DNA of 44,195 bases, from contig NW_021834703.1 of assembly GCF_006345805.1 (NCBI RefSeq), positions 1 through 44,195 of the forward strand. Direction: 5' to 3'. Every line of letters begins with the position of its first letter. The first letter of the stretch is position 1. Shown here piece by piece: positions 511 to 40,578 of this stretch. The stretch is from Octopus sinensis. Taxonomy: Eukaryota. The position numbers and the translations under genes are program-made. The notes beneath the pieces are model-generated. The model saw nothing but the letters and a program-made list of their open reading frames with translations, made no database searches and was not told the DNA's origin.

Positions 511-902
511 GTTTTTGTTGGCTCTCCGTCGGTTACGACGACGAGGGTTCCAGTTGATTCGATCAACGGAACAGCCAGCTCGTGAAATTAACGTGCAAGT
601 GGCTGAGCATTCCACAGACACGTGTAACCTTAGACACGTAGTTCTCGGGGAGATTCAGCGTGACACAGAGTGTGACAAGGCTGGCCCTTTGAAATACAGG
701 TACAACAGAAACAGGAAGTAAGAGTGAGAGAAAGTTGTGGCAAAAGAGTACAGCAGTGTTCGCCACCATCCCCTGCCCGAGCCTCGTGGAACTTTAGCTG
801 TCTTCGCTCAATAAACACTCACAATGCCCGGTCTTGGAATCGAAACCGCGATCCTACGACTGCGAGTCTGCTGCCCTAACCACTGGGCCATTGCGCCTCC
901 AC
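511..902 (-). mobile_element. tRNA-derived SINE, family C, full length with TSD
   Basis: Minus strand starts GTGGAGGCGCAATGGCCCAGTGG (A box) ... GGTTTCGATTCC (B box). A 13-bp direct repeat ATGTGTGCTATAT flanks it at 498-510 and 903-915. Highly similar to the copy at 4926-5317. Confidence 0.9.
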
Positions 903-924
903 ATGTGTGCTATATAATAAATCG

Positions 925-1270
925 CCAACACCACCACCACAAGCTCTTCCTCCATCGAAACTACCATTACAACCAATATCATCAAAACCATCAATATCAC
1001 CACCAACACCATCACCATCAACACCACCACCACCACCACCGCCAACACCACCAACATCACCACCACAACCACCACCGCCAACACCACCAACATCACCACC
1101 AAAACCACCACCACCAACACCATCACCACCACCAACGCCACCACCACCACCACCACCATCACTACCACCGCCACCACCTCCATCACCATCATCACCACCA
1201 TCACCACCATCACCACCACCGCCAACACCACCACCACCACCATCACCACCACCATCACCATAGCAGCCAT
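925..1270. repeat. Degenerate (CAC/CAT/CAA)n trinucleotide tract
   Basis: Low-complexity tract; it explains the His-, Pro- and Val-rich ORFs at 824-1291. Confidence 0.85.
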
Positions 1271-1647
1271 CATTACTCTACCAGCTTCTAGACGAGATTA
1301 GCCTCCCCCCGTCTCCATAAATCCTCATCTTCATAAATCTAGATCCTTATCACGATTACGATTATGATTTTTGCGATCATCATTATTATCCTTTATTAAA
1401 GTCATTTTCTTCACTCCTTATCTTCGACATCCTCCCCCTCCCCCACACCATTTTCCTCAACGTCCTCCTATTTCTCCTGCTCCCGAATAAGCACCGCCGA
1501 CACTCCTCCACCAAAAAAAAAAAAATGAAATGAAAAAAAGCAAAAACAAAAACAAAAAAATAAAAATAAAAATGACAATCAAACGGAATGTGATGGCGGC
1601 GTCTTTGTTGTTTGTCTGGGTGCCTTGCTTGTGTAAGCAATTTTGCC

Positions 1648-12339: not shown

Positions 12340-13190
12340 GTGTTGTTGTTTGTGGTTGTTTGTGGGTGGTGGAGGTAGTGGCAGTTGTGGTGTTGGTGGT
12401 GGTTGAGGTTATGGTGGTTGTGGTAGGGTGCGCATGGTTGTGTTAGTAGTTGTGGTGGTGGTGATGGTGATAGTGGTGGTCTTAGTGCTGGTGGTTGCGA
12501 TTATGATGGGTTTGGTGGTATTGGTCATGGTGTTGTTGGTTGTGGTGGTGTTAGTTGTGGTGGTGGTGATGGCGCTGGTTGTGGTAGTGGTGGTGGTGAA
12601 TGTGGTGTTGGTGATTGCGGTTCTGGTAGTAGTGTGGTGATGATGGTTGTGGAGGTGGTGGTAGTTTTGTTGGTGATTGCGGTTCTGGTAGTAGTGTTGG
12701 TGATGATGGTTGTGGTGGTGGTGGTAGTTTTGTTGGTGTTTGTGGTTCTGATAGTACTGTTGGTGATGATGGTTGTGGTGGTGGTAGTTTTGTTAGTGGT
12801 TGCGGTTCTGGTAGTAGTGTTGGTGATGATGGTTGTGGTGGCGGTAGTAGTTTTGTTGGAGGTTGCGGTTCTGGTAGTAGTGTTGGTGATGATGGTTGTG
12901 GTGGTGGTAGTTTTGTTGGTGGTTGCGGTTCTGGTAGTAGTGTTGGTGATGATGGTTGTGGTGGTGGTGGTAGTTTTGTTGGTGGTTGCGGTTCTGGTAG
13001 TAGTGTTGGTGATGATGGTTGTGGTGGTGGTGGTGGTAGTTTTGTTGGTGGTTGCGGTTCTGGTAGTAGTGTTGGTGACGATGGTTGTGGTGGTGGTAGT
13101 TTTGTTGGTGGTTGCGGTTCTGGTAGTAGCGTTGGTGATGATGGTTGTGGTGGTGGTGGTAGTTTTGTTGGTGGTTGTGGTTCTGCAGAA
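12340..13190. repeat. (GTG)-based degenerate tract with a ~60-66-bp minisatellite (~9.5 units, 12607-13182)
   Basis: The unit marker GCGGTTCTGGTAGTAG recurs at spacings 62,63,60,63,60,63,66,60,63. Confidence 0.9.
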
Positions 13191-13495
13191 TGTCCATTGT
13201 TCTACGATGAAAATTCAATTGTTCGAACAACTGAATTACCTGCTGCTTAATTGCAGGTAATTTGTTGAGTATTCCACGCTCTCACCATATCTGTGACAAG
13301 GGTTACATCTTGAATTACAAGTACAATTTGCCCGACGGACTTAATACAGTTTCCCTTTTCCCCTGATTTCTCTCTGAAGGCATGTGGCCTTTGGAAGCGA
13401 TAGAAAATGACATTTGGCCATCATAAATCGCAGTAAGATCCTAGCAGTTACCGTCTCCTAACCATTCGCGGTCCATATCAAGTCTACATGCAAGC

Positions 13496-25439: not shown

Positions 25440-26885
25440 CAAAGAAATATGCATAAGAGGAAAAAGAGCATTAACCTGATTACAACATTCTCAAAGGACA
25501 TAGCGTTGGCGTTTGGTCAAGATACATGTTGCTATATGGTTGTTAAAAGAAAGAAAACTGTAAAACTGTAGACTAGCAACAGCTCCATCACTGATGTAAC
25601 TGTTTCCCATATATCTGATGAGGAATGTTACAAGTATCTAGGGATGGAGGAAAACATATCTTACAATAGCACCTGTTGTAAAATACGTGTCACTAAAGAA
25701 TATTACTCTCGAATAAAGGAAATTTGTATCTCGCAAATTTCAGCATTCAATAAAACAGCGGCCCACAATGTGTTTGCTGTGCCAGTGCTCATACCAATAT
25801 TTGTGCTGCTCGATTGGACGCTTGATGAGATCCGAGCCACTGAGGTGAATACCCCGAAGGTACTAACCAGCGAACATAATTTCCAGATCAATAGTGACGT
25901 AGACCGCCTCTACTTAAAGCGAAAACAAGAGGGTAGAGGCTTAACATCAATGCAAGCTGCCATTGAATGCCATATCACATTCCTTCGGCAACATCATTTC
26001 ACCAGCAAGTCTCGAAGTGCCTCCCTTGACCAAGTTTGCATATATGAGGTTGATAACGTCATGAGACTTGGAAAGCAGCCCATTGGGCAGTATTACTTGT
26101 GTGATGAACTTAAGTCAATGCACAAAGAAGTCGCACGACTCTACTTCGACGTATCATCAGATGAAAGGATGAGCGTATATCAACAGGGATATTTATCAGC
26201 AGAAATCTACGAGATGATTAATAACATTGGTCATAGAAGTAGTCCATCATGGACCAACAGCCGGATTACTAACTGCCACTTTGAAGAGTATGTGTTTGCA
26301 ATCCAGGGAAAATATATCTAATGCACTAAACGGACAGGGATGAAGGAAAAGCAGAAAAATGTAGCAAACGATGGAAACTTTGTGGAGATAACACCAAAGA
26401 TATCACCCACATCACAAGCAGTTGCCTGAAAATGTCATCACAGTATTATTTATCGATAAGGCATGTTGTTATAACTTGGACACTGTATTATGAGATACGT
26501 CGGAAGGATAAATCGAACACAAAGAAATAAGAAACTACAATATGGTAAAAGGCATAGCCACTCATAATAAAAAAAAGTGTAGTGGCAGAATGTTCCAGCG
26601 AAAACCTCAATAAAATGTAAACACAATAGACCTGATATAATGATATGGGATAGGGAAAAGAAACTGTGTACTCTAGCGGAAATCAGCTGCCCAGCGGATG
26701 TTAACATAAAGCTAAAGACCAGCGGAAAAGAAAATACCTACGCTGAACTATTGAGAAAGCTGCAGTTACTCTATCCAGGTTACAAATTCAAGTTTATACT
26801 TAGTAATTAATGGGTCACAGAAATATGTAACACACTGCCTAAGTACCAATCTTGAGAAATTAGGCTTCTCAGAACCAGAAAAGAA
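25440..26885 (+). pseudogene. Decayed R4/Dong-type non-LTR retrotransposon ORF (RT C-terminal part, zinc knuckle, RLE endonuclease)
   Basis: FSKDIALAFGQDTC; YKYLG at 25629-25643; NVFAVPVL..DVDRLYLKRKQEGRGL; LCGDNTKDITHITSSC (CCHC remnant); HNRPDIMIWD..LAEISCPAD (PD-(D/E)xK). Stops and frameshifts present. Confidence 0.85.
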
Positions 26886-36803: not shown

Positions 36804-37171
36804 ATATTTATTTATTTATTTATTTATCTATCTATCTTTATATCTATTTATCTGTCTTTCTATCTGTCTATTTATCCATCAATCCGTCGATCGATCTATG
36901 AATCCAGCTATTTGTCTGTCTGTCTGTCTGTCAGCCTGCTTATCTATCTACACACACACACACATACATATTACTACATACATACTGGTATACAAACACA
37001 CACACATACATACATACATACACACATACATACATACATACATACAATCCTACACCACACAAACATGCACAGACATGGAGACTCACACACACACACCTAA
37101 AAAGATAAAAGCAAATCTTTTAGGACCAAACAAAATACATTCAAATGTTGATCCATCAAAGTGAAGTACTG

Positions 37172-37460
37172 TTTCTTCTCCTTCTTCTTCTTCTCCTCCT
37201 CCTCTTCTTCTTCTTCTCCTCCTCCTCCTTCTTCTTCTCCTCCTCCTTCTTCTTCTTCTTCTTCTTCTTCTTCTCTCCTCCTTCTTCTTCTTCTTCTTCT
37301 TCTCTTCTTTCTCCTCCTTCTTCTTCTTCTTCTTCTCCTCCTCCTTCTTCTTCTCCTCCTCCTCCTCCTCCTCCTTCTTCTTCTTCTCCTCCTCCTTCTT
37401 CTTCTCCTCCTCCTCCTCCTCCTCCTCCTTCCTTCTTCTTCTTCTTCTTCTTCGTCTTCT
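37172..37460. repeat. (CTT/CCT)n polypyrimidine tract
   Basis: Direct observation. Confidence 0.95.
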
Positions 37461-37699
37461 CTTTCGCTCATCCTTTTCCTTTACCTCTTGTTGCTCCTCT
37501 TCCATCTAGTCCACGCCACTCTCTTCTTTTCCATCCCTATTTTTCCTCCTTCCTTTTTCTTTTCTCTTTCCATATATTCCTCCTTCCACATCTCCCCTTC
37601 ATTTTTTATTCTTTCCTGTTATTTTCTTCCATCTTTTATTTCGTGACTCCAATATCCGTCGTCATCATGGTGCGGTCTTGTGATGAAATTATCATTCTT

Positions 37700-37960
37700 T
37701 CTATCCATCCATAAATTCCACCCACTATTCCTAGAAATCTTGGTGGATAGAATCCCCAGGTACCTCCAGCATAGGACCGTACAACAAGCAACAATAATTT
37801 CCTCTTACGACTGGATTCCTAAGCATAACCAACTGAAACCACGGATATTATCCAACCGTCTCGTTCTTGGGCTTCCTCTAAGTTTCCACGTGCTTCGCTC
37901 GGCTAGAAAAATCTCCCTTGCGATTTTTTCCCGCGACATTTTAAGTACATGTCCGTAAGG
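37700..37960 (-). mobile_element. RTE-clade (Expander-like) LINE 3' remnant
   Basis: Minus translation YGHVLKMSREKIAREIFLAERSTWKLRGSPRTRRLDNIRGFSWLCLGIQS*EEI..WRYLGILS matches the recalled RTE C-terminus (GHV.RM...RGRPRTRW.D.I..LAW..LGI); ATGG-type tail. Confidence 0.7.
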
Positions 37961-38419
37961 GAGTCATCATAAATTATTCTGGTGGACATGTGGTGCCTCT
38001 AAGGGCGTACACTAGTTTCACAAAGGCTGAAGTCAGAGAGGCGAATAAAGCGCTCAAATTTGGAAAGGATGTGATTTGGCTCAAAATGTAAAAAAATCTA
38101 AAATAGGGACTGTATTATCTAGCTGCCCTGTGCATGCTATTAAGGTTGGACCTCAATATTTTTTTTTTAATTGATGAAACATAGAAAAGGGAGCTACGAC
38201 CAAGTCAAAATAGGTCGACAATATTTTCTTCTTGGCTTTTTCGTAGTTGATGGAGGACATTTTTTTATTGTATATAACTAATCGTTCGTTTAAAAAAAAA
38301 AAAGAAGGAAAACAAGAAGCGTAGACATCACGCCTCTTCGGCTGAGAACGTATACGAATCTAGTTCTAGAACTGCACTGAACCCCAGTATACACCTATAG
38401 AATGTTGGGAAGAACATCA

Positions 38420-38446
38420 GCAATAATAATGATAATAATAATAATA

Positions 38447-38492
<46 letters not shown>

Positions 38493-38960
38493 GTTTAGAG
38501 AAAAAGAAAAAGAAGAAGGAGGAGGAGAAGGAGGAGGAGGAGGAGGAGAAGAAGAAGAAGAAGAAGAAGAAGAAGAAGGTGGAGGAGGAACAGAAGAAGA
38601 AGAAGAAGGAAAAGAAGAAGAAGGTAAAGAAGAAGAAGAAGGAGGAGGAAAAGAAGAAGAAGAAGAAGGAAAAGAAGAAGAAGGTAAAGAAGAAGAAGAA
38701 GAAGAAGAAGGAGGAGGAGGAGGAGGAGAAGAAGAAGAAGAAGAAGAATTAGAAGAAGAAGAAGAAGAAGAAGAAGAAGAAGAAGAAGGAAAAGAAGAAG
38801 AAGTAGAGAAAGAAGTAGAAGGAAAAGAAGAAGAAGAAGAAGAATTGGACAAGAGAAGAAGAAGAAAGAAGAACGCTAAAGAAGAGGAAGGAGAGGAAGA
38901 AACAAAAAAAAAGAAAAGGGGAAAATAGAAGGAAGAAAAGGAACGGGAAAGAGCAAGAAG
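38420..38960. repeat. (AAT)n followed by a (GAA/GGA)n polypurine tract with an internal ~54-bp higher-order duplication
   Basis: GGAAAAGAAGAAGAAGGTAAAG occurs twice (about 38607 and 38667). Confidence 0.9.
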
Positions 38961-39558
38961 AGAAGGAAAAAACGACGTGTAGAAGAGCACAGAATACAAA
39001 CATGAATTAAAATAACAACGAGAAATTGTAATAACAACAATACAATCGGCAATATTTTTTTTGTATTGAAAATAAAACTAATATTGACATAACACATTTG
39101 TTTTCAATTTTATTTACGTATTTATCTTCTTTTTCTTTTTTTTACTTTGACTTAGCTGTCGTCTATTCAATGTTTGTTGCACTCAACAACTAAACAAAGA
39201 AGCGGTGGCTGTTTTTATTTATTTTTTTTATTTCCAACTATCCTTAAACAGTTTGTATAATGTGTCTCATATCATAAATAATGACAAAAATATATATATA
39301 TATGTAAGAAAAACGACGATGACGATGACAGTGTCGCTAATCGTAAACAAGAGCAACAACAAGAATATTATTGATGGCAATGAGGTCAACTGGAACAACC
39401 ACAAACCACATTAGACTCGTACAATCAATGCAGAATTGGTACTAATTCGTCCTCAGTGCACAAAACACCTACATATGTATGTGTGTGTGAGTTTGCGTTT
39501 ATACATATATACAAGTAAACTACACACGTAATACATTCATTGCATATGCATCCATATC

Positions 39559-39960: not shown

Positions 39961-40080
39961 ATAATTATATAATAAGGGTTTTTTGCAACAAGTTGCTTAA
40001 ACCACATTACCGAAATATTAATATTTTCGGTATGTGGTTTAAACACTTGTTGCAAAAAACCCTTATTATTATAATTATAT
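39961..40080. repeat. 120-bp near-perfect palindrome (fold-back/MITE-like)
   Basis: The 25-bp ATAATAAGGGTTTTTTGCAACAAGT is perfectly inverted; arms continue through AAACCACA and TACCGAA to a central ATATTAATAT. Confidence 0.9.
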
Positions 40081-40274
40081 ATATATAATATTATATATAT
40101 ATATAATATTATATATATATATAGTGTTTGTATACCCTTAACTTAACGTGACAGTCCCGTATGGTAATTACACGCCGCTGTTAAGCATCGAACGCTTCCT
40201 GTCGGCTTTGACACATTTTTCCCTGTGTCCTTATGTTTGTGAAGGGGAGGTAAGCACCCCCTCCAAGCCAAGAT

Positions 40275-40333
40275 TCACACCTGAGGACATGCATGTTTCT
40301 GGGTCTTAACCCGTCATCAGCCCAGGATAGTGA
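40275..40333 (-). ncRNA. Type I hammerhead ribozyme
   Basis: Minus: UCAC-UAU-CCUGGG-CUGAUGA-C-GGGU(UAAG)ACCC-A-GAA-ACAUGCAUGU-C/CUCAGG-U-GUGA. Intact CUGAUGA and GAAA boxes, GUC triplet (cut between 40286 and 40285), 6-bp stem I plus a distal 4-bp stem, and a 10-nt palindromic stem III; C.A mismatch at 10.1/11.1. Confidence 0.88.
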
Positions 40334-40578
40334 GGTCTGCTGATTGAGGAGCCTGTCCAGCCTTCACAAACATATATATTTACAGTGAAATCTATTCACT
40401 GATCACCGTAATCAGAAATATTAAATTTCTAAATGTCTCAAAGAGACATGAGCAATGGTGGAGCGATAGAGTGGTTGTATACTGTCAACTTAACGTTATA
40501 TATATATGTATATATATATGAAGCTACATATACATATCTATTATCTTTTAATTCTTTAAGTAGTTAGACTGCCACCAT

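What the first reader, a model, noticed from the sequence alone, without database searches (positions are those of the whole stretch)
40275..40333. Near-canonical type I hammerhead ribozyme with a 10-nt palindromic stem III
CUGAUGA, GAAA and GUC are all intact. Stem I (CCUGGG/CUCAGG) is followed by an internal loop and a UCAC/GUGA stem, the geometry used for loop 2-stem I tertiary contacts. Stem III, ACAUGCAUGU, is self-complementary, allowing monomeric or dimeric cleavage. The one defect is a C.A pair at 10.1/11.1. The fold is read directly from the sequence; activity is untested.
Basis: partly seen in the sequence, partly recalled or inferred. Interest (0 to 1): 0.85.

Follow-up and report, generated by a model that had tools for sequence, protein, structure and literature searches.

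The report
Hammerhead ribozyme of an octopus-type retrozyme
The motif is a real, structurally conserved type I hammerhead ribozyme, but it is the standard ribozyme of a roughly 345-base mobile repeat (a "retrozyme"-like element) present in hundreds of copies in this cephalopod-like genome. It is a new member of a known kind, not a lone curiosity.

Summary
On the minus strand of 40275-40333 lie CUGAUGA, GAAA and GUC, a 6-bp stem I, an internal loop, a distal UCAC/GUGA helix, a 4-bp stem II and the palindrome ACAUGCAUGU. The predicted cut is after the C complementary to 40286.

The motif is not isolated. It sits in a 373-nt insertion (40124-40496, minus strand) inside a (TA)n microsatellite. The insertion is one copy of a ~344-nt dispersed repeat in a 2.7-Gb octopus-like genome. 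The core is found 38 times exactly, 88 times with up to 3 mismatches, and 274 times across sister subfamilies. A reversed-pattern control found none.

Across 56 distinct sequences the fold is backed by strong covariation. Four of six stem I pairs and the 10.3-11.3 pair of stem II change compensatorily, and loop 2 varies in length.

The C.A at 10.1/11.1 is the family consensus, not damage to this copy. A sister lineage has U-A there. No Rfam hammerhead model detects any member.

Copies show 5' truncation, partial tandems, head-to-head inverted partners, a 30-86-nt tail, 9-14-bp target duplications and a (TA)n bias. This is the insertion style of Penelope-like elements. The consensus unit folds as a very stable circle (z = -9).

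Catalysis, circular RNA and the mobilising partner remain inferred.

The parts
40124..40496 (-). Whole insertion: one unit of the ~344-nt repeat (348 nt here) plus a 26-nt terminal redundancy (tail). It matches the family consensus at 333 of 348 aligned positions.
   Evidence: The terminal direct repeats are 40124-40149 and 40470-40496.
40275..40333 (-). Type I hammerhead ribozyme domain, comprising the distal helix, internal loop 1, stem I, core, stem II and stem III.
   Evidence: for the sequence; for covariation; for copy numbers.
40321..40326 (-). Stem I, 5' strand CCUGGG (positions 2.6-2.1).
   Evidence: columns 8-13 pair with columns 50-55. 95.5% of cells are paired and 4 of 6 pairs show changes on both sides.
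40280..40285 (-). Stem I, 3' strand CUCAGG (positions 1.1-1.6).
40314..40320 (-). Catalytic box CUGAUGA (C3-A9).
   Evidence: Near-invariant within the family.
40300..40313 (-). C10.1, stem II GGGU/ACCC with loop 2 UUAAG..., and A11.1.
   Evidence: The 10.3-11.3 pair is G-C in 39 sequences and A-U in 15. Loop 2 length varies among subfamilies. The 10.1/11.1 position is C.A or U-A.
40296..40299 (-). Catalytic box GAAA (G12, A13, A14, A15.1).
   Evidence: Invariant in the 26 distinct family sequences.
40287..40296 (-). Stem III palindrome ACAUGCAUGU. As a monomer it is 3 bp plus a UGCA loop; between two ribozymes it forms a 10-bp duplex.
40286..40286 (-). C17. The predicted self-cleavage site is 3' of this nucleotide, between the complements of 40286 and 40285.
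   Evidence: Follows from standard hammerhead numbering applied. Not tested.
40411..40496 (-). 86-nt module (consensus 1-86). In most other copies it is also repeated at the 3' end as the tail. It is the part best conserved between subfamilies and is the likely recognition region for the mobilising reverse transcriptase.
   Evidence: 87-100% identity against 74-88% for the body; 417 copies with up to 2 mismatches.
40076..40123 (.). (TA)n microsatellite flanking the insertion. A further short (TA)n run begins at 40497. This is the target site.
   Evidence: Family-wide (TA)n bias.

Best explanation
The motif is the self-cleaving type I hammerhead of a small non-autonomous retroelement. This is a ~344-nt, protein-free, highly self-paired unit of the kind described as metazoan non-LTR retrozymes, in a cephalopod (octopus-like) genome. 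Proposed life cycle: loci that carry at least two ribozymes in direct orientation are transcribed. Each hammerhead cuts after GUC, probably helped by pairing of the palindromic stem III between neighbouring ribozymes. [quoted passage not shown] A host RNA ligase closes it into a stable circle. A reverse transcriptase and endonuclease supplied in trans, most likely by a Penelope-like element, copies the RNA into new sites, preferentially (TA)n. The result is 5'-truncated copies, partial tandems, head-to-head inverted partners and a short tail. The window copy is one such insertion: a single unit plus a 26-nt tail with one ribozyme whose sequence equals the family consensus. On its own it could cut a transcript once but could not release a monomer. 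Shown here: the motif, the repeat family, stem covariation, the predicted compact fold, and the insertion architecture with (TA)n bias and target-site duplications. Inferred: catalysis, circularisation, and which element supplies the enzymes.
For: Family: 87 matches at 85-92% identity over ~370 nt in a 2.7-Gb genome. Median K2P distance to the consensus is 0.039. GC is 45%. Fold: across 56 distinct ribozymes, 84% of cells are paired against 78% in shuffles. There are 104 compensatory cells against 37 +/- 6, with 0 of 500 shuffles reaching that, and a covariation score of 0.296 against at most 0.118 for slid controls. Stem I occurs as CCUGGG/CUCAGG, CCUGGA/UUCAGG, CCUAGA/UCUAGG, UCUAGA/UCUAGA and UCCAGA/UCUGGA. 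Stem II occurs as GGG/CCC or GAG/CUC, with loop 2 varying from about 2 to 7 nt. The internal loop UAY/U is conserved. Circle: the consensus unit folds at -127.7 kcal/mol against -85.9 +/- 4.7 for shuffles, z = -9; the window copy gives z = -4. Retrotransposition marks: variable 5' ends with fixed 3' ends. 13 of 30 loci carry an inverted part. All 15 close inverted ribozyme pairs are head-to-head. (TA)4+ lies at 18 of 60 insertion ends against 3.3% of control windows, p = 6e-13. Flank repeats of at least 8 nt occur in 16 of 30 copies against 70 of 600 mismatched flank pairs. The 86-nt 3' module is better conserved than the body. Partner candidates: GIY-YIG endonuclease frames are abundant, with open frames up to 781-883 aa. 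Literature: the canonical metazoan type I architecture, with helix I of 6 bp, helix II of 4 bp and a short helix III capped by a palindromic loop, is in PMC4209133. Retrozyme features and circular RNAs of 170-400 nt are in PMC7229834. Partial tandems, inverted 5'-truncated copies, a 30-40-bp tail and (TA)n targets are in PMC8557442. The link between retrozymes and Penelope-like elements is in bioRxiv 10.64898/2026.07.22.740005.
Against: No cleavage, expression or circular RNA data exist here. Position 10.1 is C or U, not the nearly universal G, so the G10.1 N7 metal-binding site (known from hammerhead biochemistry; recalled, not tested) is missing. Rates could therefore be low. No Rfam hammerhead model scores the window copy or five sister loci at E <= 10. 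Most genomic copies hold one ribozyme or none, and long tandem arrays were not seen among the listed places. This differs from the arrays described for other animals. No sequence link to an autonomous element was found. Twelve GIY-YIG loci share nothing with the unit, and 14 tail-only loci have no consistent ORF upstream. Within the family the ribozyme is well conserved but not uniquely so: its window ranks 3rd of 290.
Confidence: 0.8

Rival explanations
1. A structurally conserved but catalytically dead or very weak hammerhead-like fold. The three-way junction would be kept for another reason, such as shaping the rod-like RNA or serving as a recognition element for the reverse transcriptase. 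The Y10.1/A11.1 pair would have abolished useful self-cleavage.
For: 10.1/11.1 is never G-C in the 56 distinct sequences. The Rfam models reject the whole superfamily. Minimal hammerheads of Penelope-like elements are reported to cleave poorly in vitro (PMC4209133). Most copies carry a single ribozyme.
Against: All 11 core nucleotides plus C17 match the catalytic consensus in the family consensus. No intact-core requirement is obvious for a purely structural role. The architecture is exactly that of the active canonical metazoan type I ribozymes (PMC4209133, PMC7229834). A sister lineage has a Watson-Crick U-A at 10.1/11.1.
Confidence: 0.15
2. A chance match to the hammerhead consensus inside an ordinary repeat, with no selected RNA structure.
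For: The single-sequence folding energy is unremarkable, z = -0.37. There is no Rfam hit.
Against: Compensatory changes occur in 10 of 18 pairs across subfamilies, far above the shuffled and slid controls. Loop 2 length varies while stem II is kept. The reversed-pattern controls found zero matches.
Confidence: 0.02
3. A SINE-type (Pol III, tRNA-derived) element carrying a hammerhead, like the schistosome Sm-alpha repeats, mobilised by a LINE and not by a Penelope-like element.
For: It is a short, dispersed, non-coding repeat with target-site duplications and 5' truncation.
Against: No tRNA-like part was found. No poly(A) or simple-repeat 3' tail is seen at the copy ends. Head-to-head inverted partners, partial tandems, a 30-86-nt tail and the (TA)n bias are the marks described for Penelope-like elements, not for LINE-driven SINEs (PMC8557442).
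Confidence: 0.03

Closest known systems
Metazoan non-LTR retrozymes with type I hammerheads (Cervera and de la Pena 2020, PMC7229834), e.g. the ~350-390-bp repeats of the mussel Mytilus galloprovincialis
   Same: Unit length of 344-348 nt, within the 150-450 nt range. GC below 50%. No ORF. One type I hammerhead per unit. The monomer is predicted to be highly self-paired, with the ribozyme free at one end. Target duplications are longer than 4 bp. The host genome also carries Penelope-like elements with their own minimal hammerheads.
   Different: Copies are mostly dispersed pieces of 0.3-1.6 units, often with an inverted partner. Long tandem arrays were not seen. 10.1/11.1 is C.A or U-A, not G-C. 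Expression and circular RNA are untested. No sequence similarity to published retrozymes could be checked with the tools at hand.
Canonical metazoan type I hammerheads of satellite or SINE-like repeats (newt satellite 2, Schistosoma Sm-alpha, Dolichopoda pDo500)
   Same: Stem I of 6 bp followed by an internal loop, stem II of 4 bp, and a short stem III with a palindromic loop that allows a double hammerhead (PMC4209133).
   Different: Stem III here has 3 bp plus a tetraloop, which is stronger than the 1-2 bp of the newt type. The 10.1/11.1 pair is non-canonical. The family is undetected by Rfam RF00163.
Penelope-like elements and their pseudo-LTR minimal hammerheads (PMC4209133, PMC8557442)
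   Same: The insertion architecture matches: 5' truncation, partial tandem, head-to-head inverted 5'-truncated copy, 30-40-bp tail and (TA)n preference. A hammerhead with a palindromic stem III lies in the repeat.
   Different: There is no RT/GIY-YIG ORF. The unit shares no detectable sequence with 12 sampled GIY-YIG loci. The genome's PLE-type ribozymes (CUGAAGAG...GAAACAUGUGUC) form a different sequence family.
Plant LTR retrozymes and viroid-like circular RNAs with hammerheads (PMC4918200)
   Same: The logic is shared: self-cleaving ribozymes release a compact RNA that can circularise, and a reverse transcriptase supplied in trans copies it.
   Different: Those carry type III ribozymes, LTRs, a primer-binding site and a polypurine tract, and measure 600-1000 nt. 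None of these features is present here.

Membership tests
Hammerhead ribozyme, type I | Catalytic core C3-U4-G5-A6-N7-G8-A9 and G12-A13-A14, with A15.1-U16.1 and H17 (not G) at the cleavage site | tested here: met
   CUGAUGA, GAAA and an A-U closing pair are present, with GUC giving C17. The same holds in the family consensus.
Hammerhead ribozyme, type I | Three helices around the core, supported by covariation, with helix I open | tested here: met
   Stem I is 95.5% paired with 4 of 6 pairs compensatory. Stem II is 82% paired with 3 of 4 pairs showing changes on both sides. Stem III could not vary because the search pattern fixed it. The 5' and 3' ends lie in helix I.
Hammerhead ribozyme, type I | G10.1-C11.1 base pair (highly conserved in canonical hammerheads, PMC4209133) | tested here: not met
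   C.A in the window copy and in the family consensus. U-A occurs in 16 of 56 distinct sequences. G-C was never seen.
Hammerhead ribozyme, type I | Match to the curated covariance models (Rfam RF00163, RF00008, RF02275-RF02277) | tested here: not met
   No hammerhead match at gathering score or at E <= 10 for the window copy or for five sister loci. RF00163 does find other hammerheads in the same genome.
Hammerhead ribozyme, type I | Site-specific, Mg2+-dependent self-cleavage giving 2',3'-cyclic phosphate and 5'-OH ends | not testable with these tools
   Needs in vitro transcription and a cleavage assay.
Hammerhead ribozyme, type I | Loop 1 - loop 2 tertiary contacts | tested here: inconclusive
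   An internal loop UAY/U lies 6 bp from the core and is conserved across subfamilies, and loop 2 is A-rich. The geometry is plausible, but no contact can be shown from sequence alone.
Metazoan non-LTR retrozyme | Short (150-450 bp), low-GC, non-coding repeat carrying a type I hammerhead | tested here: met
   Unit of 344-348 nt with GC 45%. No ORF was listed in this stretch.
Metazoan non-LTR retrozyme | Tandem arrangement, from dimers to large multimers | tested here: inconclusive
   Partial tandems of 1.05-1.6 units are common, and a few loci hold 2-3 ribozymes in direct orientation (L003, L019, L059). No long arrays were seen among the listed places.
Metazoan non-LTR retrozyme | Highly self-paired monomer RNA | tested here: met
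   The consensus circle folds at -127.7 kcal/mol, z = -9. This is a prediction only.
Metazoan non-LTR retrozyme | Expressed as linear and circular RNA of unit length | not testable with these tools
   No transcriptome of the host is at hand.
Non-autonomous derivative of Penelope-like elements | PLE-type insertion structure: 5' truncation, partial tandem, inverted 5'-truncated upstream copy, 30-40-bp tail, microsatellite bias | tested here: met
   All 15 of 15 inverted pairs are head-to-head.
Non-autonomous derivative of Penelope-like elements | Sequence shared with an autonomous PLE, usually at the 3' end or pseudo-LTR | tested here: not met
   No similarity to 12 GIY-YIG loci with 1.5-kb flanks. 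The sample is small relative to at least 4846 first-look candidates, so this result is weak.

The most novel reading that the evidence does not exclude
This is a natural, still-active hammerhead lineage that has replaced the almost universal G10.1-C11.1 pair with a pyrimidine at 10.1 and a nearly fixed A at 11.1, and so works without the G10.1 N7 metal site. It defines a cephalopod retrozyme superfamily that all current covariance models miss. Its insertion scars give direct genomic evidence, in an invertebrate, that retrozymes are mobilised by (TA)n-targeting Penelope-like elements.
Probability: 0.4. Interest if true: 0.5.

Novelty: new member of a known kind. Interest (0 to 1): 0.35.

Why it matters
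Animal retrozymes are abundant circular-RNA-producing elements whose mobilising partner is still debated. This family adds a cephalopod example whose genomic scars point clearly to Penelope-like machinery: head-to-head partners, tails, (TA)n targets and a conserved 3' module. It also shows that a whole superfamily of structurally validated hammerheads is invisible to Rfam models, so Rfam-based annotations undercount ribozymes in such genomes. If the ribozyme is active, the consistent absence of G10.1-C11.1 would be a useful natural test of how much the ribozyme needs that pair.

Tried and rejected
(1) Rfam scans at gathering score and at E <= 10 found no hammerhead hit. These covered the window, an 801-nt stretch, a 101-nt stretch and five sister loci. 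The only hits were spurious miRNA or snoRNA-like matches to AT-rich hairpins.

(2) I built a covariance model (R1) to search the genome. The genome search does not accept such models, so I used IUPAC patterns.

(3) Covariation within the family alone (26 sequences, 96% identity) was uninformative. It became decisive only after sister subfamilies were added.

(4) Per-position conservation within the family does not single out the ribozyme. It ranks 3rd of 290 windows, and consensus positions 61-120 are equally conserved.

(5) The search for the autonomous partner failed. Twelve GIY-YIG loci share no sequence with the unit and hold no hammerhead core within 1.5 kb. Fourteen loci found through the tail alone are 5'-truncated copies without consistent ORFs.

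(6) I sampled ribozymes through the tail, independently of the core. Only 5 distinct full ribozymes were reached, 2 of them with an acceptable core. This is too few to test for subfamilies with dead cores.

(7) A tRNA-derived SINE origin is not supported: ARAGORN found nothing.

(8) The ORF at 25572-26321 has no Pfam domain. Its only homologue is an uncharacterised Octopus bimaculoides protein. I used it only as a hint to the host.

Full report
**Observation**

The plus strand of 40275-40333 reads, as its reverse complement, UCAC-UAU-CCUGGG-CUGAUGA-C-GGGU-UAAG-ACCC-A-GAAA-CAUGCAUGU-C-CUCAGG-U-GUGA.
- This is a complete type I hammerhead with both catalytic boxes. GUC gives C17, the complement of 40286.
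- Stem I has 6 bp and is followed by an internal loop (UAU opposite U) and a 4-bp distal helix.
- Stem II has 4 bp. The 10-nt palindrome ACAUGCAUGU forms stem III.
- The only departure from the canonical motif is C.A at 10.1/11.1.
- Single-sequence folding does not make it stand out. The MFE is -15.7 kcal/mol with z = -0.37, and the hammerhead fold itself scores -13.0.
- No Rfam family reaches its threshold in the window. No hammerhead model appears even at E <= 10 in 801-nt or 101-nt searches.

**Context**

The window belongs to a 2.7-Gb assembly. It is AT-rich and full of microsatellites. The one informative ORF has its only homologue in Octopus bimaculoides, at 56% identity. The host is therefore most likely an octopus-like cephalopod. 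This is an inference.

The ribozyme lies in a 373-nt insertion, 40124-40496 on the minus strand, with (TA)n on both sides. The insertion is one copy of a dispersed repeat.
- There are 87 matches of 85-92% identity over ~370 nt.
- The median K2P distance to the consensus is 0.039.
- The unit is 344 nt in the consensus and 348 nt here, with 333 identical positions. GC is 45%.
- The 35-nt ribozyme core occurs 38 times exactly.
- The 47-nt version occurs 88 times with up to 3 mismatches.
- CTGATGA-N8-20-GAAACATGCATGTC occurs 274 times.
- The reversed-pattern control gave zero in every case.

**Is the fold selected?**

Within the family the sequences are too alike to tell: 96% column identity and 3 compensatory cells.

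The 274 pattern hits include sister subfamilies that are homologous over the whole unit at 74-88% identity. Their stems differ.
- Stem I occurs as CCUGGG/CUCAGG, CCUGGA/UUCAGG, CCUAGA/UCUAGG, CCUAGG/UCUAGG, UCUAGA/UCUAGA and UCCAGA/UCUGGA.
- Stem II occurs as GGG/CCC or GAG/CUC, with loop 2 varying from about 2 to 7 nt.
- The distal helix occurs as UCAC/GUGA or CUGC/GCAG.

On an alignment of 56 distinct sequences, the named structure gives these counts:

| Measure | Observed | Control |
|---|---|---|
| Cells paired | 84.3% | 77.9% in shuffles |
| Cells with changes on both sides | 104 | 37.2 +/- 5.7 in shuffles (0 of 500 reach 104) |
| Covariation score | 0.296 | 0.177 in shuffles (0 of 500); at most 0.118 for slid partners |

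Four of six stem I pairs are compensatory, and the 10.3-11.3 pair is G-C in 39 sequences and A-U in 15.

One limit applies. These sequences were collected with a pattern that fixed the core and stem III, so those columns carry no information. An attempt to sample independently of the core, through the 3' module, reached only five full ribozymes and is inconclusive.

**The 10.1/11.1 position**

The C.A is not damage to this copy. It is the family consensus. Across the superfamily, A11.1 is in 55 of 56 distinct sequences. Position 10.1 is C in 38, U in 16 and G in 2. The 16 with U form a U-A pair, mostly in the UCUAGA and UCCAGA lineages.
- C-to-U at this CpG is the commonest mutation, so the direction of change cannot be decided.
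- Canonical hammerheads keep G10.1-C11.1 (PMC4209133).
- From hammerhead biochemistry (recalled, not tested here), the N7 of G10.1 helps bind a divalent ion next to the A9 phosphate. A lower cleavage rate is therefore possible.
- No Rfam hammerhead model reports any member of the superfamily at E <= 10. The same model, RF00163, does find a different family of minimal hammerheads in this genome, CUGAAGAG...GAAACAUGUGUC.

**Monomer or dimer**
- The stem III hairpin alone is unstable at +1.0 kcal/mol.
- The intermolecular 10-bp duplex scores -14.7 kcal/mol.
- Two 59-nt domains together fold to -42.7 kcal/mol as a double hammerhead, against 2 x -15.7 apart.
- A short helix III with a palindromic loop, and dimer-assisted cleavage, is the pattern described for metazoan type I ribozymes (PMC4209133). 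Invertebrate versions can also cut as monomers (PMC7229834).

**The element**
- Folded as a circle, the consensus unit gives -127.7 kcal/mol against -85.9 +/- 4.7 for shuffles, z = -9. The window copy gives z = -4.
- Stem I continues into a long quasi-rod, which leaves the ribozyme at one end.
- Read in the ribozyme's sense, copies have fixed 3' ends and variable 5' ends. The 3' end lies after consensus ~31 or after consensus 86.
- Bodies often start exactly at consensus 1 and are preceded by a 5'-truncated upstream copy, forming a partial tandem.
- 13 of 30 loci carry an inverted part.
- All 15 close inverted ribozyme pairs seen are in minus-then-plus order, that is, head-to-head.
- Many copies are so truncated that they lack the ribozyme.
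- (TA)4+ lies at 18 of 60 insertion ends against 3.3% of nearby control windows, p = 6e-13.
- Flank repeats of at least 8 nt occur in 16 of 30 copies, against 70 of 600 mismatched flank pairs. Clear 9-14-bp duplications occur outside microsatellites.
- The 86-nt 3' module is the part best conserved between subfamilies, at 87-100%. It occurs 417 times with up to 2 mismatches.

This combination is what Craig et al. describe for Penelope-like elements (PMC8557442): 5' truncation, partial tandem, an inverted 5'-truncated neighbour, a 30-40-bp tail and (TA)n targets.

GIY-YIG endonuclease frames are abundant in this genome, with open frames of up to 781-883 aa. Twelve sampled loci share no sequence with the unit, so the partner is not identified.

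No tRNA-like part was found.

**Comparison with what is known**

The element matches the definition of metazoan non-LTR retrozymes (PMC7229834) in these respects:
- size and GC content;
- lack of coding capacity;
- one type I ribozyme per unit;
- a predicted compact monomer;
- coexistence with Penelope-like elements.

It differs in three respects:
- copies are mostly dispersed fragments rather than long arrays;
- inverted partners are frequent;
- the 10.1/11.1 pair is non-canonical.

[quoted passage not shown] The scars seen here fit that view.

Hammerheads have been counted in a cephalopod genome by Rfam annotation: 235 hammerhead 1 hits in the giant squid (PMC6962438). I found no paper in the searched library that describes a cephalopod retrozyme.

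**Verdict**

The object is a new member of a known kind, with a consistent small deviation at 10.1/11.1. The window copy is an ordinary single-ribozyme insertion. Catalysis, circular RNA and the mobilising enzyme remain to be shown.

Noticed in passing
window 39962-40077: A near-perfect 116-nt AT-rich hairpin (long inverted repeat) lies just upstream of the (TA)n tract. It draws spurious sub-threshold matches to miRNA precursor models on both strands. It may be a MITE-like foldback element.
   Followed up: no
G000 loci L031, L034-L037, L039, L040 (e.g. C13:29988995-29989039): A second, unrelated hammerhead family occurs in the same genome: GUAC-CUGAAGAG-ACCC-AGAA-GGGU-C-GAAAC-AUGU-GUC-GUAC. 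It has a 4-bp stem I and a palindromic loop 3, the minimal type reported for Penelope-like elements. Several copies exceed the Rfam RF00163 cut-off.
   Followed up: partly
G000, e.g. C10:27570372-27570635 (L067), C6:82399801-82400064 (L068), C6:12733272-12733535: GIY-YIG endonuclease frames are very abundant, with at least 4846 first-look candidates. Many sit in uninterrupted frames of 781-883 aa with identical scores. This suggests young, possibly active Penelope-like elements.
   Followed up: partly
window 25572-26321 (+): A 249-aa stop-free frame has no Pfam domain. Its only homologue in 5.8 billion proteins is an uncharacterised Octopus bimaculoides protein (56% identity over 67% of the query). 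It is probably a lineage-specific transposon remnant.
   Followed up: partly
window 815-1297, 12427-13281, 37083-37714, 38328-39077: Long simple or short-period repeats give stop-free frames in several reading frames (His-rich, Val/Thr-rich, Glu/Lys/Arg-rich, Ser/Pro-rich). The window as a whole is dominated by microsatellites.
   Followed up: no
loci L093-L106 (e.g. L094 3208-3531): Many copies of the repeat are reduced to the last ~100-150 nt of the unit plus the 86-nt tail, with an equally short inverted partner head-to-head. These ribozyme-free fragments may be as numerous as the ribozyme-bearing copies.
   Followed up: partly
L059 (G000:C1:192534690-192536380): A sister subfamily has two ribozymes in direct orientation 449 nt apart, so its unit is longer than the 344-nt family. 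It is one of the few loci seen that could release a unit-length RNA.
   Followed up: no
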